From Podarcis pityusensis (lineage: Eukaryota): 64,000 bases of DNA. Positions within the stretch are counted from its first letter, which is position 1. Each line of letters starts with the position of its first letter. This document shows positions 5,134 through 59,359 of this stretch, in pieces. Made by a program: the position numbers and the translations under genes. The notes beneath the pieces were generated by a model. The model made no database searches, was not told the DNA's origin, and worked only from the letters and a program-made list of their open reading frames with translations. Location: NCBI GenBank assembly GCA_964106645.2, contig OZ067038.1. One strand, given 5' to 3'.

Positions 5134-5679
5134 CCACTTGTTGGTTATTTTGCAGTACTAGACAAGACCATGAAATAAACACACTCAGTTCCTTTTTATA
5201 TTCATTTTTTGAATCATTTTAGTATTCTTACATTTTTTAGTTGCAGTCATTCATGTTATTCAAGGGCTGCTCAAATAGATCTAAATAATTCAGGTTTGGG
5301 GGCAATACACAGGCAACTCCCTATTTCCACAGGGGTTGAGTTCCACTTCAAAGCGCTCATTGGCAGAGCATGCATAAGCATACACCACCTCGTTCCACTC
5401 ACACACCCATTCTGCCCCCATTCCTCCCTCTTTTGGGTCCGAAAGTACCGTACTTTTCGCACCATAGGACGCACTTTTTCCGACTTAAAAACTAAGGAGA
5501 AAAGTCTGTGCGTCCTATGGAGTGAATGCAGGGGGGGAGGCAGGCAGGAAAAGCCCCCAAGAGCCCCACACAAGCTTCACGCGGCTCTTGCGGGCTTTTC
5601 CCCAGGAGGGAGAAGGGACTGACACCGCCAGTCAGTCCCTTCTCCCTCCTCTAGAAAAGCCTTGAGCAACCTCTCCAGC

Positions 5680-6475
5680 GGGGGGGGGGGGGGGAGGCTG
5701 CACAAGGCTAAAGAGGAAGCCAGGGTAGGGAGCGCAATCCATCCCGCTTGCTGCCCTGGCTTCCTCTTTAGCCTTGCGCGCCCCTCCAGCCGGGGGGTGG
5801 GGGGGAGCTGCGCAAGGCTAAAGAAGAAGCCAGGGCAGAGAGCGCGATCCATCCCGTTTGCTGCCCTGGCTTCCTCTTTAGCCTTGCGCGCCCCTCCAGC
5901 CGGGGGGGGGGGGAGCTGCGCAAGGCTAAAGAGGAAGCCAGGGCAGAGAGCGCGATCCATCCCGTTCAATCGATCCCATTCGCTGCCCTGGCTTCCTCGC
6001 CTCTCCAGCCGCAGGAGGCTGCGCAAGGCTAAAGAGGAAGCCAGGGCAGCGAGCGCAATCCATCCCGCTTGCTGCCCTGGCTTCCTCTTTAGCCTTGCGC
6101 GCCCCTCCAGCCGGGGGGGGGGCTGCGCAAGGCTAAAGAGGAAGCCAGGGCAGCGAGCGCAATCCATCCCGCTTGCTGCCCTGGCTTCCTCTTTAGCCTT
6201 GCGCGCCCCTCCAGCCGGGGGGGGGAGCTGCGCAAGGCTAAAGAGGAAGCCAGGGCAGAGAGCGCGATCCATCCCGTTCGATTGATCCCGTTCGCTGCCC
6301 TGGCTTCCTCGCCTCTCCAGCCGCGGGAGGCTGCGCAAGGCTAAAGAGGAAGCCAGGGCAGCGAGCGCAATCCATCCCGCTTACTGCCCTGACTTCCTCT
6401 TTAGCCTTGCGCGCCCCTCCAGCCGGGGGGGAGCTGCGCAAGGCTAAAGAGGAAGCCAGGGCAGCAAGCGCGATC
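5680..6475. repeat. GC-rich tandem array of ~105-110-bp palindromic units inside the Tc2-like element
   Basis: About 8 copies of GCGCAAGGCTAAAGAGGAAGCCAGGGCAG, most followed by its reverse complement, separated by G-runs. Confidence 0.9.
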
Positions 6476-6677
6476 CACCAGAGGTAGATCTTAACCCTTG
6501 CCTCACCTGGGAGCTTCTCTGGGCAGGAATTCCCTCAGCTTAAGTGGGGTGGGGGAAGTGTGGCAGGTAGGGGGGTACCTACCTAGACACTGAAGCCACA
6601 TGTCTCTCCCATGAAAATTGTGAGTGGGTATTGTGTGAAGTGGCTGTGGATCTCCTGCCGCAGAACTGTAGGACTGT

Positions 6678-6872
6678 ATAGAGTTGGGAGGGCCACCTGA
6701 GGGTCATCTAGCCCAGCCCCCTCACAATGTAGGAATCACAGCTAAAGAACGCCAGGCAGATGGTCCCCCAACCGCTGCTTAAAAACTTCCAGTGGTGGAG
6801 ACCCCCAACACCTTCCGAGGTTATAGAATTGCAGGGTTGGAAGGGAACCCCAGGAGTCATCTAGTCCAGCCC
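6678..6872 (-). mobile_element. Two CR1-type 3' end fragments inside the Tc2-like element
   Basis: ATAGAGTTGG(G)AAGG...GTCATCTAG(C/T)CCAGCCCC occurs twice; minus frame SPPLEVFKQRLGDHLPGVL resembles the C-terminus of the CR1 at 34172. Confidence 0.7.
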
Positions 6873-7883
6873 CGGTGGACAGCGGGCGCGATCCATCCCG
6901 TTGCGCAAGGCTAAAGATGCCGCGCAAGGCTAAAGAGGAAGCCAAGGATCGCGCTCGCTGCCTTGTCTTCTTCTTTAGCCTCGCTGGAGAGGTTTAGCTC
7001 CTGGCTGGAGAGGTTGCGCAGCTATGGATCCCGCTCGCTGTCTTGGCTTCTTTGCTCTTTGGGGCTGGGGGGGGGAACCCGGGCTTCCCCCGCAGCCCCG
7101 AGAAGCTCTGGGAGAAGCTTTTTTTCCCTTGATTTCCCCCTCTAAAAACTAGGTGCGTCCTGTGGTCCAGTGCGTCCAATAGAGCGAAAAATACGGTACT
7201 TGCATGTCTGCAGTCACACATCAACTGGACACACCTAAAATGGTCGCCACCAAGGTATATCCACTAATGCAACAAAAAGCTGAATTTTTAAATAATTTAA
7301 AAAGCACATACAATGGTATACATCTGTTCAACTGCATCCTGCTTTTTCTTCCCAAGTTTCCTGTCAGGATTGAAAGGAAGCTCACCACTAGCCTTAGAGG
7401 CAACCAGAGTCTCTCTCTTCCTTTTCTTGCCTGCTGCATCAGCATCAAAGCTCATCTTTTAGCAGCCGTGGCCTGGAAGCCATTTTGTTTCACTCATAAT
7501 GCCCCTGATGAAGAGGGTGGGGGAAATGGGGGCCACCACAAAGAACAGGGTTTGAAATTAGCTTAAGATCCTGGGTTAAACGGAGATGTTCATTGACAAA
7601 ACTGTTAACCCCTCTTAAGTCTTGGAAAATAGGCACCCCAGAAGAAGTAGGGGTGGGGTAGAGAAAGAGTGCAAAGGCTAGTTGCCCACTGACCTTAAAA
7701 GTTAAGTTATTTTTCATAGTTACACCCCTCCTCAGAGCCTATAGCCCCCAGGGCAGCTTTAGAAGGAGATGCAAAACTACAGACTTCAGAGAACAAAGAA
7801 ATGCAGATGAAATGAAATAACAAGCCTTTATTTCTTACACCAGTCCCAGCCAGCATGGTTAATAGTCAGGAATGATGGGACCA

Positions 7884-8022
7884 TAAAGGTAAACGTAAAG
7901 GGACCCCTGACAATTATGTCCAGTCGTGACAGACTCTGGGGTTGCAGCGCTCATCTCGCTCTATAGGCCGAGGGAGCCGGCATTTGTCTGCAGACAGCTT
8001 CCGGGTCATGTGGCCAGCATGA
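7884..8022 (-). mobile_element. Sauria SINE, 3' part
   Basis: AAAGGTAAA tail, GGGACCCCTG...GTCCAGTC...GGGAGCCGGC...CTTCCGGGTCATGTGGCCAGCATGAC; matches copies at 39470 and 62608. Confidence 0.85.
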
Positions 8023-23815: not shown

Positions 23816-24539
23816 GACAACCAAAGAAGTTTCTATGTGAAAACTGGGCCTAAACCCTGACTGAAATAGATATAGAAAATCTGTTTCCCCCAAGAGTACC
23901 TGGATCTGGTCTGCAACTCAAGAATCTTGTCCAAAAAGGGAACTGGCAACTGGTTGGTGATTATGTATGTGTGTTTGTGTATGTATTTCTGCTACTGAAT
24001 TATTATTGTTTTATTATTTATTGAATTTATATAGTACATTATATAATATAATATATAATTATATAGTACATTATGAACATACACGTCCCCTTGTTTTATG
24101 TTCACTGTTTATACACATACATTCTATATGTCTTTTAATTAGCATCACCATTGAAAACATTCTCTTGATTCAAAGTATATTTACTTAGGAGCAAACAGTG
24201 TAAAAATTAAAATTCATTTATTTCAGAATGGGTGTGAGAGTGCATCCATATGAAATATTTAGACATGGTTCATAACAGGTTTGATGCTTTTAACCCAAAG
24301 TGCATATATGGCCAATAATCTTGACTTAACTGCTGCACCATTTGGATGGGCAACTAACTGAGGAGAGAGAGTTTACAGTGGGCAGATAGTTCACAAACAC
24401 ATAAAAATTAAGACTCTTGCAGCACAATTGTATGTTATGCAAATACTGTATATAACAAATGTGTCCTGCAGCCAAAATGGTGTCCTCAGCTTGTTAGTTT
24501 TGTAGGGTATGAAGCATTATATGCATTATGCCACATATA

Positions 24540-25251
24540 CCGTATTTTTCGCACCATAGGACACACCGGACAATAAGACGCACCTTGTTTTAGAGGGGGG
24601 AGAACAAGAAAAAAAATTCTCCCCCTCTCTGCCCAGCGAAGAGGCGCTGCGCAGAGAGGGGGAGAACTTTCCCCCTCTTGTTTTCCCGCTCTAAAACAAG
24701 GTGCCGTTTAAGGTGCGTTCAGGCGGCTACCTTGGAAGCCTGGAGAGCGAGAGGGGTCGGTGTGCACTGACCCCTCTCGCTCTCCAGGCTTCAGGTTCCT
24801 TTCGACCTGCTCTTTGGGGCTGGCGGGGGGAAGCCCACCACCAGCTCCAAAGAGCAGGTCAGGGAGCAGCGGAAAGGCGCAGTGGAGAGGCTGCTGCCAT
24901 AGTCGCGCGTCACCTCTCCAGCTGGGAGAGGGTCGCGGGGGGCTTTTTTAGCCCCGCGCGCGCTCTCCCAGCTGGAGAGGTGACGCGTGGCTATAGAGGC
25001 TCCTGCCATAGCCGCGCGTCACCTCTCCAGCCGGGAGAGGGTCTTGGGGTTATGGCTTCTTTAGCCCCCCGCGTGCTCTCCCGGCTGGAGAGGTGACGCG
25101 CGGCTATAGAGGCTCCTTCCATAGCCGCGTGTCACCTCTCCAGCCGGGTGAGGGTCGCGGGGCTATGGTGTCTTCGCTCCATAGGATGCACACACATTTC
25201 CCCTTCATTTTTGAAGGGGAAAAAGTGCGTCCTATAGAGCGAAAAATACGG
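24540..25251. mobile_element. TcMar-Tc2 (Kanga-like) MITE with internal palindromic tandem array
   Basis: TIRs CCGTATTTTTCGCACCATAGGACAC / GTGCGTCCTATAGAGCGAAAAATACGG, TA flanks; ~120-bp hairpin units at ~24895-25168. Confidence 0.9.
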
Positions 25252-26063
25252 TAACTTTCAAGAAGACAAAAGGAGTTATACTTTAGAAATTTTGCTGGGA
25301 AAAGGATAGCAAATATGTTATTAAGAAGGAATACTACCACCAGTGAAATAAAAAATTAATAAAAACATATGTGTTTGATAGCATGAGACCAACATTAGAA
25401 GGGTCTTTGAAAGACAGAAGTTATTTAAGTAGCTACCGAGTTAAGTCATTTAAACATTACTAGCAATCTATAGTCTATAGTTTGTACTTCTGAAATTCAT
25501 AGTTTCATTTGCAAAAAAAACTCCAACATCACTGCATATTACTTTTAATCATCATAATCTAATAATAGATTTCTCCATTCCCCTCAAAATACTATACTGG
25601 AGGTATCTTAGAGATCTGTCATCTGATAAGTTCATTGCTACTCACCATCAAAACAGCTTTGCTGTGCTAATATATTTTGGGAAGTTCATTAGTTGTTCAT
25701 CTGTTCTTTTCTCCTCCCCCTCATCCTAAGAGGCTGCCATAATACAACATACCATTTCCCCAGCATGAAAAAAATGTCAGGGATCCTGACCTTAACGCCA
25801 GGAAAAAATGGAATGGAAGCCAATAGTAGCAACCGCCATAGCGTTTTATCCTTTAAGCAAATCTCATCACAGCTGAACTGTGATTTTAGCAACAGTATTT
25901 CTTTATTACAACTATTGCTTAGCAGCAGTAGTAATGCATTAATGATACTGCATTGTTAAGTGAATAGCTAAAGATGGGACAAGGATGAAACAGAAGTCTC
26001 AGTTCTCTGATAATAAAAAAAATCCTTCCAGTAGCACCTTTAAGACCAACTAAGTTAGTTCTT

Positions 26064-26103
26064 GGTATGAGCTTTCGTGTGCAAGCACACTTCTTCAGAT
26101 ACC
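26064..26103 (-). ncRNA. Minimal type I hammerhead ribozyme motif (copy 1)
   Basis: Minus strand GGTAT-CTGAAGA-A-GTGTG(CTTG)CACAC-GAAA-GC-TC-ATACC: stem I, CUGANGA core, stem II, GAAA, UH cleavage site. Confidence 0.8.
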
Positions 26104-26236
26104 TTTCATTTCATGCGGCTCAATGTGGTGCCTTCCATGGTTCCAGTTACAGATAGGTAGCCGTGTTGGTCTGCCATAGTCAAAATAAAAAAAATCCTTC
26201 CAGTAGCACCTTTAAGACCAACTAAGTTAGTTCTTG

Positions 26237-26274
26237 GTATGAGCTTTCGTGTGCAAGCACACTTCTTCAGATAC
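26237..26274 (-). ncRNA. Minimal type I hammerhead ribozyme motif (copy 2)
   Basis: Same motif on the minus strand with a 4-bp stem I (GTAT/ATAC). Confidence 0.78.
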
Positions 26275-26328
26275 TGTATCTGAAGGTATCTGAAGAAGTG
26301 TGCTTCAGGTATCTGAAGGTATACTTCA

Positions 26329-26368
26329 GGTATCTGAAGAAGTGTGCTTGCACACGAAAGCTCATACC
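26329..26368 (+). ncRNA. Minimal type I hammerhead ribozyme motif (copy 3)
   Basis: GGTATCTGAAGAAGTGTGCTTGCACACGAAAGCTCATACC; predicted cleavage 3' of C26363. Confidence 0.8.
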
Positions 26369-29049
26369 AAGAACTAACTTAGTTGGTCTTAAAGGTGCTA
26401 CTGGAAGGATTTTTTTTATTTTGACTATGGCAGACCAACACGGCTACCTATCCTTCTCTGATAATGTCAGTGATCACAGCAACAAAAAATTACTTTAAAT
26501 GAAAACAAAGATACAGTTACAGATGACCAGCAATAGTAAAACAGGTTATGTATTCTCATTACACTGGAGAATTAGAGTTCCATTTTGGCATACAGGATTT
26601 AATAAAGCGTACTTTTAGATTCATACAAATTTCATCCACCTTGAAGAACGTGGAAATAGCTTTAGAAATCTATTACCTGTTTCAGTATCATTAACAGAAC
26701 TCTTGACTAGTCTTCCAACAAAACAACATTACTTAAATAATGTAACTGAAGTAAGTAGAATACAGTCCAAGTTCTGCTACACAATTATAATTTCATCCAG
26801 ACAGACAAGTTCTGTTCCCTTCTGTTACCTACCTTTGGCTTGGCGGCATCTACCAGCCAATGTAGGCAACTCCCTCCCATCAGACAGGCGCCTCCTCTAT
26901 TGTTTTTTTGGTACCTGTTGAAAACACTTTTCTTTCAACAAGTCTTCGAAGTACTGTAGAGTCTTTTCCCCCAGCTGGTTTGGATTTGAACTGATTTTAT
27001 ATATCCGTTTTTGCTGTTGTTTTAAATTGTTTTGATATACATGGTTAGTTTTCTATACGAAAATGTTTTAGCTGTTCTGTGTATGTTTTTGTTGTCCTGT
27101 AAATTGCTTTGGGATGTCTCAGGAGAAGTGATCATAAATGAAATAAATTAATGAATGAGTAATACAAATTCAGCCAGAAGACCCCACAATGCTAGATAAG
27201 TTTGTGCTCAATCTTTCTCCAAAGATCCAGATCGTGTATATTCAGAGTGAGTAAAGATATGCAACCTCTGTCATTTCCATTGTGATCAACACCCTCACAC
27301 AAACATCTCTCAGGTCTTTAGTGATATACTATACAACTATAAATGCAACCTCCAACCTTATGATGCATTTCACTAGAACACTAGAAAGCCTTTAGTGTGC
27401 ATTTTTCTCCTGCTTTTTCTTTAATGCCGATAGTAAGCTCTAGCATCTCTCTTACATAACTTTCACACGTCACAATCGCCAGGCAAAATTTTAATAATTC
27501 TCTTGATGTTCTACACACCAGGATCTTAACTGAGAGGCTCATATGCACAGACCTTCTGTTCTCTTCTACAAGTACTACTAGACCTAGACCTTTCTCACAT
27601 TACAGAGTTCTCTCTTAGCCAGGATACGAAGCCACCTTCAAATCCCGGAAAAATGGAAACTATGGGAAGCCCTAGCCATGGTAAATCGTGGTGCCAGTGT
27701 AATAATGGATCAGGCCAGGAGGAATAGGGGAGAGGGAATTTGTTTTCAAGATGGGAAGGAGCACACACTCTTATACCCAGCACAATCCTTCAGCCACAAT
27801 TAAGAACAAGCCATATGACATCCTGGCAGATGCATAATATTAATCATAATCAGTACAACCAACGTTTCCCATCTCCTAACTACAGTTAGGAAATCTGAAG
27901 CATTCTCCATCTCCTTTCCCCCACCCCTTCAGATGCAAATTAACACTTACCTGTTCAGAACTATGAAGCAACATTATGCCTCTACTGATATCAGCACTAA
28001 ACCTTTAGTTGTTAAAACCAACCTGCTTCTAACAGTGGTTACAAGCTCTATTTTTGGAATTACCTCCAGTTAGTATTATTATATGCAAGGAAAGAAAAGG
28101 AGAGATCTTAATGAATCTGCAGCCCTCCTCAAATCATTCACTTCATTAATTAAAGGCCAAGCTGCATTTTCACGAGTTTCACTTTAAGGAGGAATGTGCT
28201 TGTTCAGTGAGAGACCTTCAACAGAGCTAAGAAAATCACATGAAGAGTGTTTCTCTGTTTGTCATCTAATTATAGCTTAGACAGAGCTATGTAGTAGTCC
28301 CAGGGCAATCCCTGGACTAACAAAAAGGGCAGAGCTCATGGAAGCTTCCATTCTCCCAACTCTTGGAAGCTGTGCTATCCCAGAGAAAGTAACAGCTTCA
28401 GCAGAACCTCTTAATTTACTCTCAGGAAGCAACCCTCAGAGCCATGATGTAATTAGTAAGAGTTCTGCATTAATCCTACACAAGACTTCAGGTTTCTACC
28501 TAGCATTAAGAAGACAAACTCAGGAATTTCACATCGCCTTTGTTCCAAAGGCCTGGGAGCTTCCCTAAGTCATGCCCCATGAGCTAGCACAGGGGCTGCA
28601 AAGGTCGTAGGAACCTTAGAAGTCAGTCTTTGGGAGCTTCTGAACACGTCCTTCTAGTGTCCATAATTTGGATGAAAAATAGAAGGCAGTTCTAAGGAGA
28701 CAGTTGAAAGCTTCCTGAAAAACAGAGATAATTTCTAACAACAGAAAACTAAACCAAACGTATTACTTCTTTGGCTCAGCTCTGTTTAATTTCCAAATCT
28801 TTTACATTAAGATTGGGCAATGGCTTTTCATTTGCAGCTGCATGCAAGACAAAAACCTGAGAATTATACCAGTCCCAACAGATGTCAAACTCATTATCAC
28901 TTTCCAGTGTGACCACTCAAAGATATGCTAAGTTACAGCTCCAAATAAAAACTGAGGATAGTGTCAACCTGATCATTCTGCCAACGTCAAGCCATATGGA
29001 CACCTCAACATGCTAACATTTTCTTTTAAAAAGTCTTATTTTAAAATGC

Positions 29050-34171: not shown

Positions 34172-35265
34172 TAGAATCATAGAATCATAGAGCTGGAAGA
34201 GACCACAAGGGCCATCGAGTCCAACCCCCTGCCAAGCAGGAAACACCATCAGAGCACTCCTGACATATGGTTGTCAAGCCTCTGCTTAAAGACCTCCAAA
34301 GAAGGAGACTCCACCACACTCCTTGGCAGCAAATTCCACTGTCAAACAGCTCTTACTGTCAGGAAGTTCTTCCTAATGTTTAGGTGGAATCTTCTTTCTT
34401 GTAGTTTGGATCCATTGCTCCGTGTCCGCTTCTCTGGAGCAGCAGAAAACAACCTTTCTCCCTCCTCTATGTGACATCCTTTTATATATTTGAACATGGC
34501 CATCATATCACCCCTTAACCTCCTCTTCTCCAGGCTAAACATGCCCAGCTCCCTTAGTCGTTCCTCATAAGGCATCGTTTCCAGGCCTTTGACCATTTTG
34601 GTTGCCCTCCTCTGGACACGTTCCAGTTTGTCAGTGTCCTTCTTGAACTGTGGTGCCCAGAACTGGACACAGCACTCCAGGTGAGGTCTGACCAGAGCAG
34701 AATACAGTGGCACTATTACTTCCCTTGATCTAGATGCTATACTCCTATTGATGCAGCCCAGAATTGCATTGGCTTTTTTAGCTGCCGCGTCACACTGTTG
34801 GCTCATGTCAAGTTTGTGGTCAACCAAGACTCCTAGATCCTTTTCACATGTACTGCTCTCAAGCCAGGTGTCCCCCATCTTGTATTTGTGCCTCTCATTT
34901 TTTTTGCCCAAGTGCAATACTTTACATTTCTCCCTGTTAAAATTCATCTTGTTTGTTTTGGCCCAGTTCTCTAATCTGTCAAGGTCATTTTGAAGTGTGA
35001 TCCTGTCCTCTGGGGTGTTAGCCACCCCTCCCAGTTTGGTGTCATCTGCAAATTTGATCAGGATGCCCTTGAGTCCATCATCCAAGTCGTTGATAAAGAT
35101 GTTGAATAAGACCGGGCCCAAGACAGAACCCTGTGGCACCCCACTAGTCACTCTTCTCCAGGATGAAGAGGAACCATTGATGAGCACCCTTTGGGTTCGG
35201 TCAGTCAGCCAGTTACAAATCCACTGAGTGGTAGCATAGTCAAGACCGCATTTTACCAGCTTCTT
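34172..35265 (-). mobile_element. Young 5'-truncated CR1 LINE (RT C-terminal half and 3' UTR)
   Basis: [49 protein letters not shown]; (ATTCTATG)n tail; one premature TGA at 34342-34344. Confidence 0.97.
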
Positions 35266-36937
35266 TAAAATCTCCATCCCCTCAGTAGCCTGGAAGACTC
35301 ACAACATAGCCTGCTCACGAGCACTTCCATTGGCAAAGAAGCATGCAGAAGAACAAGATTTTCCTAGGGCTGCTAACACTGTTTCCAAACTGTTTTTAAA
35401 TTACTCCATTATGATTTAAATTTGCCACGCAATTTACAATTATTAAAATCAAGTTCCTCTTGCTCGTTGTCACCAATTTTACGACCTTGGTTAGGATTCC
35501 CATACAAACAATTGTTAGCAGGCTGCTAATGTGATGATTTTCCTCTTCTTGGAAAAAATAGCACAGAACAATTTTCTCCCAATCGCAGCAGAGTCAAACA
35601 ATGCATTTGATGTTGGGCTCATCAGGAGGTCTGTGACTCAAAGTGTTGAATTCCCACGGTTTTGCAAAGTGGGATTTCAAAAACAAGAGTTTTAAAAATC
35701 AGTTGCTAAGTGCAAAAAGCAGTGACTTGTTAACTAGGTGTGGGTGTCAGAAAGAGAGGCAGAGACAGAGACACAGAGAGAGTAAGACAAAGGGAGAACT
35801 GCACAGAAACCTTTAAGGTAAAAAATCAAAATCTTCCTATTATGTCAGATGGGGGGGCAGGATCTAGGCTTTGCAGTTTGTGGACTATGGAGAGGAATTG
35901 GCAGCACATGACCTGAAATGTTTTATTTCTGATTATTGTGTGAAGTTTTAGGAGTTGTTTTTAAGAATATGTTCTGGTGCTTATGTATTTTTATTGTACT
36001 TAGCTTTATAAGCCAGCTCATGTGGTCATTTTTTCAGAGTGATTAGCAGCAGAAAAATAATATAATTCCATTACTTGTTTTTAAAAGGGTGGCAACATAT
36101 TGCCCTGTAAATTCAGCCTGAGCCCCTTGTAATATTTTTGTAGCTAGTAATTATATTGCTCCTGCAGGTCACTTAAACCAAATGTGTAGCCACATGAATT
36201 TCAGCAGTGCATGAATTTCAGCAGTGCACAGTGGTTGAGTGGCCATAAAAAGTAAATTGCTGCCCACCTTCAGAGCAGCAAAATATATTCAAAAACACAA
36301 ATGGAATTCCCTACTCTCTACCAACTCTCCTGAACTCACTGAGAAAAAGTGAGTGTTGAGGGAATATTTTGTTCTCCAATTCCCACACCCCAACAACAGC
36401 TACTTGAGCTTGAATAAACACGACAATCATATTCATGTTACCTAACATAAAATTATGACTAGGCTTTCTAGTATAAACTTTACAGAGATGTCACTAAAAT
36501 GAAAGTTCCTCAGTCTATGTTAAATATATGATCTTCAAAAATGCTTGCCTATTTGAACCCCTGAATACTAAAAAGCATCTGCTCAAGCCAACAAACTTAA
36601 GTGGACATACCTTCCATGTCTCTTGATTTTTAAAAAAGTTTTAAGTTAGGCCTTCAGTCAGCCTCCATGGAAATGCACTGACTACTTGTGCATTTTCTAG
36701 TCCTAGCTGTCGAACCGTGCAAATTCTCAACAAGTTAATCAAATCAGCATCACTTTTCAATAACGTCAATAACTGTTAAGCAGCAGTAGCAGGATGGGTT
36801 CTGGCTGGGAGGTGGATACTAACCTTAGCCTCCCCAGACCTTTTCTGTTGCATGGTACCTGGTGAATGGCAACCTACTGAAGCAGCCAGAAAGCCTGGCT
36901 AGCTCCCCCACTAAGGGCTTTTGGGAGGCAAAGGGTC

Positions 36938-57834: not shown

Positions 57835-58597
57835 AGTAACTTGTGTGCTTATTTCCAAGACTGGGTTCATGCAAAACTCAAATCAATTTTCAAATTGCAG
57901 TACTGTAACTAGATGAATGATGAACTATAAGCTTCTAAATCTCTCATCAAATCTCTGTGCTCATGGCAGAATTTTCCTAAAAGCCCTGGCTGTCCTTAAA
58001 TCTGATACCATGAGTCAACAGTAACATTCCTGATCTAAATTTCTGCTACTATATTGGGGCCTGCTAGCCTCAGCATGTGCTTTATAAAGCACCAAGAACT
58101 AAGGTTTGCAGTGAATTTGGTTGCTGTTAACATGCTGCTAACATGTGAGAGTGAGAACAAGGCACTCATTCAATAAGGGGCATCAAAAGAGCCTAAATAA
58201 TTCAGAAAAAGCCACTGATATTAATTGCTGTACAGTAAGTTTGTTCAAGAAGCCTTGGTATAACAATACCAAGCTGCCGCATACACCCCAGATCAAGTAA
58301 ATCAATAAAAATACTTATTAATTTACCCACTAAATTTGATTTATCTGACCCCCACTAACATGAAGCCTGCCCCCCCAACATAAATCCTGGCTACGCCCAT
58401 GAATAATAACTAACTGGGGAAAACAACTACAATACATTAATAAACAGGGAACATAAAAGGAAGAGAGGAAAGCTGTTATAGGAGAGAGAACTGAATGTAA
58501 AAGGATACGGGAGGTGAGATGAAAACAACTGGAGATAATAAGGTATAAGGAGAATGGGAGAAGAAATTACAGGGGCTGAGTAAAATACGTTCAGAGG

Positions 58598-59359
58598 TGT
58601 CAGGGGTTCAGGAGCAGAGGCAAGGGCAAGGGAGGAAACAGAGAGCGAGGGGGAGGAGGCAGAAGAAAAGATGAGTGATGACGACGACCCGAGATCTCCG
58701 AGTCTTTCCAGTGAATCAGAAGATTCACAGAAAGGAGCACCAGTGGCCAGGGCAAGGGGGGAGCCTAGGGGGACACCCCAGGAAGATAGAGCCAGAGGGG
58801 ACTCAGAGGGGAGCAGTTGGAAATCGGGACCAGCGTCACCGCCAGAGAGCAGGGAAGAGGAAGGGCGCCAGGGATCAAGCGCTGGCAGCTCACAACAGGG
58901 GGGAGGGCACGAGTCAGGAGTGGCCACACCTCCATCGGGGAGCGAAGAAACGGTCAGACGGAAGGTGGAAGGTTGGGCGCGCGCGCCAAGTTCAAATGCA
59001 CAGGAAGGTGGCGCAGTAGGCAGCCCGGAAAGGGAGCCAGGTCCTAAAGCCCGCCGAAAGGAGGGAGAAGAGTCAGGGGGGTCAGCATCAGCGTCAGAGG
59101 AATCCCGGAAGGAAGAGACCCCGGGGGGCAGAGGGACCCAGAGAAGAACAGTCAGGCGGAAAAGGTGGAGCAAGGCTAGGATATTAAGTTGGTGTACAAG
59201 GGGCAGAGACTCAGATGGAGCTTCGCCGATCTAACCATTAGACGTAGGGTTGCACGCAGCAGCTTGAGAATGGAAACTGTAACTCAATAAAGACTTTTAT
59301 TTAATGATCGCTGGCTAGCGTGATCCTCTGTGAGCTAGGATCTGGAAGCAACTCTGACA
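58598..59359 (+). mobile_element. Solo LTR (762 bp), probably Gypsy-type
   Basis: Termini TGTCAG...CTGACA, exact 5-bp TSD AGAGG (58593-58597, 59360-59364), AATAAA at 59286-59291. Confidence 0.9.
58671..59234 (+). CDS. Hypothetical LTR-encoded ORF, 187 aa, low-complexity S/E/G/R-rich with basic C-terminus
   Basis: ATG-initiated ORF wholly inside the solo LTR; frame already open from LTR base 2; stop ~50 nt before AATAAA; no recognised homology. Confidence 0.35.
   Translation: MSDDDDPRSPSLSSESEDSQKGAPVARARGEPRGTPQEDRARGDSEGSSWKSGPASPPESREEEGRQGSSAGSSQQGGGHESGVATPPSGSEETVRRKVEGWARAPSSNAQEGGAVGSPEREPGPKARRKEGEESGGSASASEESRKEETPGGRGTQRRTVRRKRWSKARILSWCTRGRDSDGASPI

What the first reader, a model, noticed from the sequence alone, without database searches (positions are those of the whole stretch)
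26064..26274. Two tandem same-strand hammerhead ribozymes that could excise a 172-nt retrozyme-like RNA
Seen: two minus-strand copies of GTAT-CTGAAGA-A-GTGTG(CTTG)CACAC-GAAA-GC-TC-ATAC, with predicted cleavage sites between 26241/26240 and 26069/26068, exactly 172 nt apart. Helix III is reduced to the palindrome AGCT. Established: Penelope-like pLTRs carry minimal type I hammerheads that are proposed to act as dimers through a palindromic helix III, and metazoan non-LTR retrozymes are short tandem hammerhead repeats that yield small circular RNAs. Inference: a minus-strand transcript could form an intramolecular double hammerhead and release a 172-nt monomer, which would be a retrozyme-like unit created by one insertion. 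The extra A before stem II and the short stem I may lower activity.
Basis: partly seen in the sequence, partly recalled or inferred. Interest (0 to 1): 0.85.

Follow-up and report, generated by a model that had tools for sequence, protein, structure and literature searches.

The report
Penelope-type mini-insertion with three hammerhead motifs
The two tandem hammerhead motifs are real, but they belong to one recent, non-coding Penelope-like retroelement insertion built in that family's usual partial-tandem plus inverted-copy form, a known kind of element, and nothing shows that this locus releases a 172-nt RNA.

Summary
Observation confirmed. Two identical minus-strand minimal hammerhead (HHR) motifs lie at 26065-26102 and 26237-26274, with predicted cleavage sites 172 nt apart. 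A third identical copy lies on the plus strand at 26330-26367.

All three belong to one 439-bp insertion (26015-26453) flanked by a 12-bp target-site duplication. Contigs of a sister species (about 1% flank divergence) run straight from 26002 to 26454, giving the empty site.

The layout is the published Penelope-like element (PLE) insertion pattern in miniature: a partial tandem, an inverted 5'-truncated copy, and a 32-35-nt "tail" at one end only. The motif has every published feature of PLE "min-HHRs" and the same architecture as the Anolis Poseidon_Ac HHR, which needs protein to cleave. The family is very abundant.

Evidence against a self-excising locus:
- cDNA ends in the central joint stop at the HHR's 5' edge, not at the cleavage site, and all three HHR sites were copied uncleaved.
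- A 123-bp perfect foldback would bury the upstream HHR in a read-through transcript.
- The double-hammerhead fold is 15 kcal/mol above the MFE.
- Rfam HHR models give no match.
- Family RNA reads show no ends at the cleavage site.

Reptile retrozymes of about 176 bp derived from PLEs are already described. Other first readers of this scan noted similar Penelope/HHR inserts elsewhere in this genome. Verdict: new member of a known kind, low to moderate interest.

The parts
26003..26014 (.). Target-site duplication, left copy (ATTATCAGAGAA read on the minus strand).
   Evidence: Identical 12-mer at 26454-26465. Sister-species contigs carry it once and jump from 26002 to 26454 (table 8, records 16 and 9). 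The organism A unique contig ends at 26014.
26015..26102 (-). Copy A: unit nt 1-88 (up to 91 if the ATT shared with the TSD is counted). It is the 3'-most partial unit and ends in the T8 run, without the tail. It contains HHR A at 26065-26102, with predicted cleavage between 26069 and 26068.
   Evidence: 91-nt direct repeat, 100% identical to copy B (D3). Min-HHR descriptor hit with a 5-bp helix I. Other family copies also end at unit nt 88 (loose ends at 26015 and 26417).
26103..26151 (-). 49-nt segment (unit nt 124-172) between copy B and copy A. It is the rarer part of the family: its first 6-8 nt are the end of the tail in other copies, and the last ~42 nt are the leader just upstream of the HHR.
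   Evidence: K-mer depth is about 26,000 here against about 1,000,000 in the neighbouring bins and 18 in unique flanks (table 2). Many other copies diverge at 26144-26146, which is unit nt 129-131 (table 7).
26152..26274 (-). Copy B: unit nt 1-123, the upstream tandem copy. It contains HHR B at 26237-26274 (4-bp helix I), with predicted cleavage between 26241 and 26240.
   Evidence: It is 100% complementary to copy C over 123 nt (I1).
26275..26329 (.). Head-to-head joint: 55 nt made of four or five short antisense fragments of the first 4-20 nt of the unit. Each fragment ends at unit nt 170-172 or nt 1.
   Evidence: Greedy decomposition against the unit. Short direct repeats D4 and D6 and inverted repeats I13 and I14.
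26330..26452 (+). Copy C: inverted 5'-truncated copy, unit nt 1-123 (two more upstream nt at 26328-26329). It ends with the 32-35-nt tail. It contains HHR C at 26330-26367, with predicted cleavage between 26363 and 26364. Position 26453 is one extra non-matching base.
   Evidence: (I1, I2).
26454..26465 (.). Target-site duplication, right copy.

Best explanation
This is one recent insertion (26015-26453, 439 bp, non-coding) of a very abundant, non-autonomous Penelope-like-element (PLE) family. It could equally be called a reptile non-LTR retrozyme family.

Inferred mechanism:
1. A longer-than-unit linear RNA (at least 264 nt of a 172-nt periodic template), with its 5' end at the 5' edge of the hammerhead, was used in trans by a PLE RT/GIY-YIG protein.
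2. The protein nicked both target strands 12 bp apart at an ATT-containing site and primed reverse transcription from both nicks. RT started inside the RNA at the two family-typical start regions: the U-run at unit nt 88, and nt 123 after the AC-rich stretch. The 32-35 nt between them is the 'tail'.
3. The plus-strand cDNA copied 1.5 units, giving copies A and B as a partial tandem. The minus-strand cDNA copied one unit, giving the inverted copy C, then re-copied the RNA's 5' end several times.
4. The two cDNA ends were joined head to head.

The three identical minimal type I hammerheads are passengers of this process. They have the same architecture as the Anolis Poseidon_Ac HHR, which cleaves only with PLE protein. 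At this locus the pair A/B could in principle delimit a 172-nt RNA, but the locus is most likely inert.

Shown here: the repeat anatomy, the TSD, the empty site, the family abundance, the motif fit and the joint anatomy. Inferred: two-strand priming, use of the protein in trans, the template form and the lack of activity.
For: - Anatomy and identity of the copies.
- The 12-bp TSD and the empty site in organism E: X8 record 16 and X15 record 9 are contiguous across 26002/26454, with 8 flank differences in about 650 nt. Organism A flanks are identical to the window.
- Family abundance and subfamily markers: element bins reach a summed k-mer depth of about 1e6 against 18 in the flanks. The window's loop-2 variant is carried by about 37% of organism A's depth and about 1% of organism E's (tables 2 and 3).
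- Other copies end at unit nt 88 and at nt 129-131 (table 7).
- Motif: it fits the min-HHR definition, with a 4-5 bp helix I, an unpaired nt between 9 and 10.1, G10.1-C11.1, no loop 3 and a palindromic 15.2-16.2.
- The Poseidon_Ac consensus shows the same layout, with CG in place of GC at 15.2-16.2.
- PLE insertion hallmarks are described in PMC8557442: partial tandem, adjacent inverted 5'-truncated copy, and a 30-40-bp tail at one end.
- PMC11167929 reports nicking and extension of both strands at ATT, two internal RT start sites, and an HHR that is dispensable for insertion.
- Joint fragments all end at unit nt 170-172 or nt 1.
- No ORF longer than 58 codons in the repeated unit; GC 42%.
Against: - No RT/GIY-YIG ORF is at this locus, and no autonomous partner sharing this 3' module was seen. 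Only one window is available.
- Two-strand priming is taken from in vitro work on a different lizard PLE.
- A 172-nt circular RNA copied by rolling-circle RT would also give a more-than-unit cDNA. It is disfavoured only because five or six cDNA segments stop at one point.
- The internal arrangement rests on the assembly. Short contigs confirm only the outer junctions.
- RNA data come from a species that lacks this insertion, so the locus's own expression is unknown.
Confidence: 0.85

Rival explanations
1. One reading: the tandem pair is a working retrozyme-like unit. A minus-strand transcript folds into an intramolecular double hammerhead through the AGCU palindrome, cuts twice and releases a 172-nt RNA that may be circularised.
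For: - Intact conserved core in both copies, H17 = C, and a palindromic 15.2-16.2.
- Each isolated motif folds into helix I plus helix II as its MFE.
- The same HHR architecture cleaves in Anolis PAc when PLE protein is present.
- Dimeric min-HHR constructs show some activity.
- Reptile retrozyme consensus lengths average 176 bp.
- The family was recently active.
Against: - The double-hammerhead fold is +15 kcal/mol over the MFE. HHR helices have probability <=0.002 in the 266-nt transcript.
- The upstream HHR is fully paired with the inverted copy in a read-through transcript (-277 kcal/mol hairpin).
- Published activity is low: min-HHRs cleave weakly in vitro, only 1 of 9 Xenopus dimers cleaved, and PAc does not cleave without protein.
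- No read-end pile at the equivalent sites in family RNA-seq of organism E (table 6).
- No Rfam hammerhead match.
- The templates of this very insertion were uncut at three of three sites.
Confidence: 0.1
2. The locus matters mainly as a hairpin-RNA source. The 123-bp perfect foldback (copy C with copy B), transcribed in either direction, gives long dsRNA that could feed small-RNA silencing of the family or be edited. The hammerheads are irrelevant.
For: - 123-nt, 100% complementary arms 55 nt apart (I1).
- Predicted hairpin of -277 kcal/mol.
- Rfam microRNA-precursor models give sub-threshold hits only because of this hairpin.
- Another first-reader note flagged the foldback.
Against: No evidence that the locus is transcribed, and no small-RNA data. 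Such foldbacks are a routine by-product of PLE integration.
Confidence: 0.1
3. The tandem and inverted arrangement is an assembly artefact caused by a high-copy repeat, and the real locus holds a simpler single copy.
For: - PLE structures are known to trouble assemblies.
- The three copies are 100% identical.
- No contig spans the interior.
Against: - Both outer junctions are confirmed by zero-mismatch contigs of organism A that end exactly at 26014 and 26454.
- Runs of organism A hold 0.79-0.80 of the sampled words, against 0.49-0.62 in the other species' DNA runs.
- The two outer ends have opposite orientations, so at least one sense and one inverted copy must exist.
- The joint has a specific, non-collapsed structure.
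Confidence: 0.05

Closest known systems
Poseidon_Ac (PAc), the Penelope/Poseidon-clade PLE of Anolis carolinensis, and its hammerhead (Frangieh et al. 2024, PMC11167929)
   Same: - Same HHR layout: short helix I, CUGANGA, one unpaired nt, 5-6 bp helix II, GAAA, a 2-nt palindrome, U, then C17.
- An AC-rich stretch about 100 nt downstream of the HHR.
- Two alternative 3' ends 30-40 nt apart (the tail).
- An ATT at the nicked target.
- Tandem organisation.
- Insertion from uncleaved RNA.
   Different: - No sequence similarity beyond the core.
- No ORF here. In PAc the ORF starts inside the HHR.
- 172-nt period instead of about 2.7 kb.
- GC rather than CG at 15.2-16.2.
- Nothing was tested biochemically here.
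Minimal hammerheads (min-HHRs) of metazoan PLEs (Cervera and de la Pena 2014, PMC4209133)
   Same: All four emergent features listed in that paper are present: an unpaired nt between 9 and 10.1, G10.1-C11.1, palindromic 15.2-16.2 and a short helix I. Occurrence is also the same: single, tandem or opposite-strand motifs in truncated PLEs, with reptiles mentioned.
   Different: Helix II is 5 bp here, shorter than the 7-8 bp reported for Schistosoma. The family is nearly invariant rather than highly variable, which resembles the D. virilis case of ongoing invasion.
Metazoan non-LTR retrozymes (Cervera and de la Pena 2020, PMC7229834; Li, Clavereau and Pollet 2026, bioRxiv 10.64898/2026.07.22.740005)
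   Same: A short (172 nt), non-coding, low-GC (42%) unit with a type I HHR in each repeat. PLE-derived. The reptile consensus length averages 176 bp.
   Different: - Only 1.5 units at this locus, plus an inverted copy.
- The HHR is the loop-less PLE type, without the loop 1-loop 2 contacts of canonical retrozyme HHRs.
- No unit-length linear or circular RNA has been shown.
Newt/axolotl satellite hammerheads acting as double hammerheads (cited in PMC7229834 and PMC4209133)
   Same: A weak helix III with a palindrome, so activity is expected only when two motifs pair.
   Different: The amphibian motifs keep a 1-2-bp stem with a loop and tertiary contacts, and sit in long arrays. Here helix III would be only 4 bp (AGCU/AGCU).

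Membership tests
Hammerhead ribozyme, type I (PLE min-HHR variant) | Conserved core C3 U4 G5 A6 N7 G8 A9 ... G12 A13 A14, A15.1, U16.1, H17 | tested here: met
   CTGAAGA ... GAAA-GC-TC in all three copies. H17 = C.
Hammerhead ribozyme, type I (PLE min-HHR variant) | Helices I and II flank the core, with G10.1-C11.1. Min-HHR traits: helix I of 4-5 bp, an unpaired nt between 9 and 10.1, no loop 3, palindromic 15.2-16.2. | tested here: met
   Descriptor hits only the three copies and none in 200 random sequences. Isolated motifs fold with helix I (4-5 bp) and helix II (5 bp) as the MFE. Definition taken.
Hammerhead ribozyme, type I (PLE min-HHR variant) | Match to curated Rfam hammerhead covariance models | tested here: not met
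   No hammerhead family at gathering score in the window. None at E<=10 on 1 kb or on 66 nt. The loop-less PLE variant appears not to be covered by these models.
Hammerhead ribozyme, type I (PLE min-HHR variant) | Site-specific self-cleavage | not testable with these tools
   Indirect evidence only. No read-end pile at the sites in family RNA-seq. The published relatives cleave weakly or need protein.
Penelope-like element insertion | Target-site duplication and an empty site | tested here: met
   12-bp TSD. Contiguous empty site in organism E.
Penelope-like element insertion | Partial tandem (pLTR-forming), an adjacent inverted 5'-truncated copy, and a 30-40-bp tail at one end only | tested here: met
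   Copies B and A are tandem and copy C is inverted. Copy C ends at nt 123 and copy A at nt 88-91, a 32-35-nt difference.
Penelope-like element insertion | ORF with a telomerase-like RT and a GIY-YIG endonuclease | tested here: not met
   Longest stop-free run in the repeated unit is 58 codons. The element is therefore non-autonomous or only a terminal module. The only RT ORF in the window (34342-35277) is 8 kb away and unclassified.
Metazoan non-LTR retrozyme | Tandem repeats of a short non-coding unit, each carrying a type I HHR | tested here: inconclusive
   Two HHRs lie 172 nt apart, but the second unit is only 53% complete. The joint anatomy implies a longer-than-unit template. Tandem arrays elsewhere could not be counted.
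Metazoan non-LTR retrozyme | Unit-length linear and circular RNAs in tissues | not tested
   No RNA run of organism A was offered. The organism E RNA-seq shows only read-through of family copies embedded in other transcripts.

The most novel reading that the evidence does not exclude
This lizard lineage carries a currently active 172-nt, ORF-less PLE derivative. Its transposition template is a longer-than-unit linear RNA that starts exactly at the hammerhead's 5' edge and is not HHR-cleaved. On this reading, loci like this one release a 172-nt hammerhead-bounded RNA or circle when PLE protein is present. That would make the insertion a natural in vivo record of two-strand target-primed reverse transcription, and a functional reptile retrozyme.
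Probability: 0.12. Interest if true: 0.5.

Novelty: new member of a known kind. Interest (0 to 1): 0.25.

Why it matters
The class is known: PLE min-HHRs were described in 2014, metazoan retrozymes in 2020, and their PLE origin, including reptile families of about 176 bp, in 2026. The locus therefore adds a member, not a new principle.

Its value is as a clean, dated specimen:
- The insertion is absent from a sister species at about 1% divergence and has zero internal differences, so the family was mobile very recently.
- Its anatomy agrees with in vitro findings for the Anolis PLE: priming from both nicks, internal RT starts with and without the tail, run-off at a defined RNA 5' end, and no use of HHR-cut RNA.

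That bears on the open question of what PLE hammerheads are for. It argues that cleavage is not part of the template pathway.

Tried and rejected
- **Rfam.** No hammerhead hit at any threshold. The sub-threshold microRNA-precursor hits (for example MIR2646, 99.6 bits against a gathering score of 245) only reflect the perfect foldback and were rejected.
- **Exact-pattern scans.** Scans for the HHR, allowing the loop variant, in JGI metagenome contigs and IMG/VR found nothing, so no outside copies were available for covariation analysis.
- **Within-window search.** No older or diverged copy of the unit exists elsewhere in the window.
- **Scan-notes look-up by sequence.** Blank.
- **Host-gene context.** Not resolved. 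Pfam on the ten longest ORFs gave only an RVT_1 fragment at 34342-35277 and two sub-threshold hits. PDB sequence searches were uninformative. The strand of any host transcription is therefore unknown.
- **Poseidon_Ac comparison.** Read by eye only. The HHR architecture is shared, but there is no sequence homology, so the element is not a PAc copy.
- **Circular 172-nt RNA as template (rolling-circle RT).** Considered. Judged less likely than a linear more-than-unit RNA, because five or six cDNA segments terminate at the same point.
- **Tandem made by a template jump at integration.** Considered. A jump from an RNA 5' end at nt 1 would not land seamlessly at nt 172, so a continuous template is more parsimonious.
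- **Complex prediction and the protein tools.** Not relevant, because the element is non-coding.

Full report
**1. The observation**

The 34-nt core occurs exactly three times in the window, with none expected in 100 shuffles: minus 26065-26098, minus 26237-26270 and plus 26334-26367.

The two minus-strand copies sit in a 91-nt direct repeat that is 100% identical and spaced 172 nt apart (D3). With helix I included, the motifs are 26065-26102 and 26237-26274. The C17 sites fall between 26069/26068 and 26241/26240, as stated. Helix III is only AGCT, and one A lies between A9 and G10.1.

I wrote a descriptor from the published min-HHR definition: helix I of at least 4 bp, CTGANGA, an optional unpaired nt, helix II of 4-8 bp closed by G-C, GAAA, a 0/2/4-nt palindrome, T, then H. 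It finds only these three places and nothing in 200 random sequences of the same first-order composition.

This finding did not mention the third copy, which is inverted. It forms a 123-nt, 100% complementary inverted repeat with the upstream tandem copy (26152-26274 against 26330-26452, I1).

**2. One insertion, and a recent one**

The whole structure is bounded by an identical 12-mer (ATTATCAGAGAA on the minus strand) at 26003-26014 and 26454-26465.

Laying public contigs on 25700-26800 gave the following:
- Organism A (zero flank differences, so the window's own species): unique contigs stop exactly at 26014 and start at 26454.
- Organism E (8 differences in about 650 flank bases, roughly 1.2%): a 2,218-nt DNA contig and a 446-nt contig of a second run pass without a break from 26002 to 26454.

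That is the empty site with a single copy of the 12-mer. The insertion is therefore 26015-26453 (439 bp) plus a 12-bp TSD.

Runs of organism A hold 0.79-0.80 of the sampled words. DNA runs of the other five species labels hold 0.49-0.62. This is consistent with the insertion being private to A.

The three copies show no difference over 216 paired positions. Together with absence from a roughly 1%-diverged relative, this places the insertion within the last few million years at most. This age is an inference and depends on the substitution rate.

**3. A very abundant family with typical ends**

Summed k-mer depth over the element reaches about 1,000,000, against 17.5-18.2 in the flanks of the same run (table 2). 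The tool warns that this is not a copy number, but it implies on the order of 10^4 copies.

The 26107-26143 bin, which lies between copies B and A, is about 40 times rarer (about 26,000).

Other copies diverge from this one at 26144-26146 (unit nt 129-131) and at 26015/26417 (unit nt 88, the end of the T8 run) (table 7).

The window's variants are subfamily markers. At loop 2 the window has CTTG, while the family majority has CATG. The window's state holds about 37% of depth in A and about 1% in E. A second site shows about 56% against less than 1% (table 3). This indicates a burst in lineage A.

No position of the HHR core varies at the 10% level or above. In so young a family that reflects recency, not selection.

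Other first readers of this scan independently noted 99-bp, 133-bp and palindromic Penelope-type hammerhead inserts with TSDs elsewhere in this genome, and took the genome to be a lizard's. I did not check those notes.

**4. What the architecture is**

Craig et al. (PMC8557442) describe PLE insertions as follows:
- highly 5'-truncated;
- often partial tandems (forming pseudo-LTRs);
- with a 30-40-bp 'tail' often present at one end only.

Read on the minus strand, this locus runs:
- TSD;
- inverted copy C (unit nt 123 back to nt 1);
- a 55-nt joint;
- copy B (nt 1-123) and the next 49 nt (nt 124-172);
- copy A (nt 1-88, or up to 91);
- TSD.

Copy C ends with the tail and copy A without it, a difference of 32-35 nt. 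Every structural hallmark is met.

The RT/GIY-YIG ORF is missing. The repeated unit has no stop-free run above 58 codons and is 42% GC. The element is therefore a non-autonomous PLE derivative, or only the terminal module of one.

**5. The hammerhead**

Cervera and de la Pena (PMC4209133) defined PLE min-HHRs as having no helix III or loop 3. They list as recurrent features a short helix I (4-5 bp), a conserved nucleotide between 9 and 10.1, a G10.1-C11.1 pair and palindromic 15.2-16.2. All of these are present here.

The Poseidon_Ac consensus (supplement of PMC11167929) can be parsed the same way: CCU, CUGAGGA, U, a 6-bp helix II, GAAA, CG, U, C, with the cut 26 nt after the ATG as that paper states. 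It also has an AC-rich stretch at ORF nt 111-118, where RT starts. The present unit has a similar CCAACACGG stretch at unit nt 105-113.

Rfam's curated hammerhead models give no match at all, even on 66 nt at E<=10. Membership rests on the published descriptor, not on a covariance model.

**6. How the insertion was probably made**

Frangieh et al. (PMC11167929) report for the Anolis PLE protein in vitro:
- it nicks and extends both DNA strands, preferentially at ATT in AT-rich DNA;
- reverse transcription starts at two adjacent internal sites of the RNA, and the sequence between them is the tail;
- the HHR cleaves only with protein, is not needed for insertion, and leaves no read ends in RNA-seq.

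Mapping that onto this locus is inference:
- The plus-strand 3'-OH at 26014 primed a cDNA that runs from unit nt 88 of one unit, through the whole preceding unit, to nt 1 (26015-26274).
- The minus-strand 3'-OH at 26454 primed a cDNA from nt 123 to the 5' end (26453-26328).

Decomposing the 55-nt joint shows that it consists of further antisense snippets: nt 4 to 170, 7 to 171, 20 to 170 and 7 to 1. Each ends within three bases of the HHR's 5' edge. Five or six independent cDNA termini at one point argue for a discrete RNA 5' end there, with repeated re-copying, before the two cDNA ends were joined head to head.

Two consequences follow.
- The RNA was not cut at the HHR.
- The plus-strand cDNA crossed one unit boundary seamlessly, so the template was already longer than one 172-nt unit. 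The period was most likely inherited from a tandem master, not created here.

A 172-nt circle copied by rolling-circle RT, as proposed in general terms in PMC4209133, would also give more-than-unit cDNA. It does not explain the common stop point.

**7. Would this locus self-excise a 172-nt RNA?**

In favour:
- The cores are intact.
- Each isolated motif folds into helices I and II as its MFE.
- The same architecture is catalytically competent in PAc with protein.

Against:
Forcing both monomeric HHRs costs 5.4 kcal/mol, and forcing the nested intramolecular double hammerhead costs 15 kcal/mol over the MFE.
- Two motifs in trans prefer to pair through the palindromic helix II rather than through AGCU.
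- A transcript of the full insertion forms a perfect hairpin of about 130 bp (-277 kcal/mol) that buries HHR B.
- Min-HHR dimers cleave weakly in vitro, and only 1 of 9 Xenopus retrozyme dimers cleaved.
- In 886 RNA-seq reads of organism E laid on the element, 98% run on into other flanks, so they come from copies embedded in other transcripts. Coverage is continuous over the cleavage positions, and the only start pile-up is at 26023 (tables 1, 2, 6).

Nearest-neighbour energies ignore tertiary contacts and protein help. The RNA run is from a species that lacks this locus. These points lower the odds of activity but do not exclude it. I put activity at about 10%.

**8. Comparison with the known, and novelty**

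The locus works like, and by structure is, a PLE-type insertion carrying PLE min-HHRs.

By the operational definition of Li, Clavereau and Pollet (bioRxiv 10.64898/2026.07.22.740005), it resembles a dimeric non-LTR retrozyme. Those authors already report such families in four of five reptiles, with a mean consensus of 176 bp, and argue that they derive from PLE pLTRs.

It differs from canonical retrozymes (PMC7229834) in two ways. It has the loop-less HHR, and there is no evidence of unit-length RNA.

It is therefore a new member of a known kind. Its modest added value is as an in vivo specimen that agrees with the in vitro PLE model and argues against HHR-cut RNA as the template.

**9. Limits**

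- Only one window of the genome was available, so family structure is inferred from k-mer depth and loose ends.
- The host gene and the transcribed strand were not identified.
- The species identity as a lizard rests on other readers' unchecked notes.
- The internal order of the insertion rests on the assembly.

Noticed in passing
window 24538-25253: A roughly 716-bp block bounded by 29-nt inverted termini (24538-24566 and 25225-25253, 90% complementary). Inside it are 113-nt tandem repeats (24941-25166) and many GC-rich nested inverted repeats. It looks like a MITE-like or foldback DNA element about 750 bp from the insertion.
   Followed up: no
window 34342-35277 (-): A 311-aa ORF with a reverse-transcriptase domain (RVT_1, E = 3.5e-17). 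Its only PDB sequence match is a weak one to group II intron RT LtrA. Whether it is a LINE or a PLE RT was not determined.
   Followed up: partly
window 26152-26452: The 123-bp perfect foldback draws sub-threshold hits from several Rfam microRNA-precursor models. It could give long dsRNA if transcribed. Another first-reader note covers it (s1-722603).
   Followed up: partly
organism E RNA run X23, reads laid at window 26015-26102 and 26330-26417: One copy dominates the expressed reads in the sister species. It is a simple monomer running from the HHR's first base to the end of the T8 run (unit nt 1-88), embedded in another transcript. The same flanking sequence is seen on both sides, as reverse complements, in 73-152 reads (table 7). 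This fits an RNA 5' end at nt 1 and an RT start at the U-run.
   Followed up: partly
window 5577-6338: A GC-rich stretch (54% GC over 6001-8000) with long overlapping ORFs on both strands. Pfam gives only a sub-threshold hit and PDB gives no match. It may be a CpG island or first exon, but this is unresolved.
   Followed up: partly
window 58427-59234: Overlapping ORFs of 187-248 aa on both strands with no Pfam hit. Another reader noted a solo LTR with an ORF here (s1-722525).
   Followed up: no
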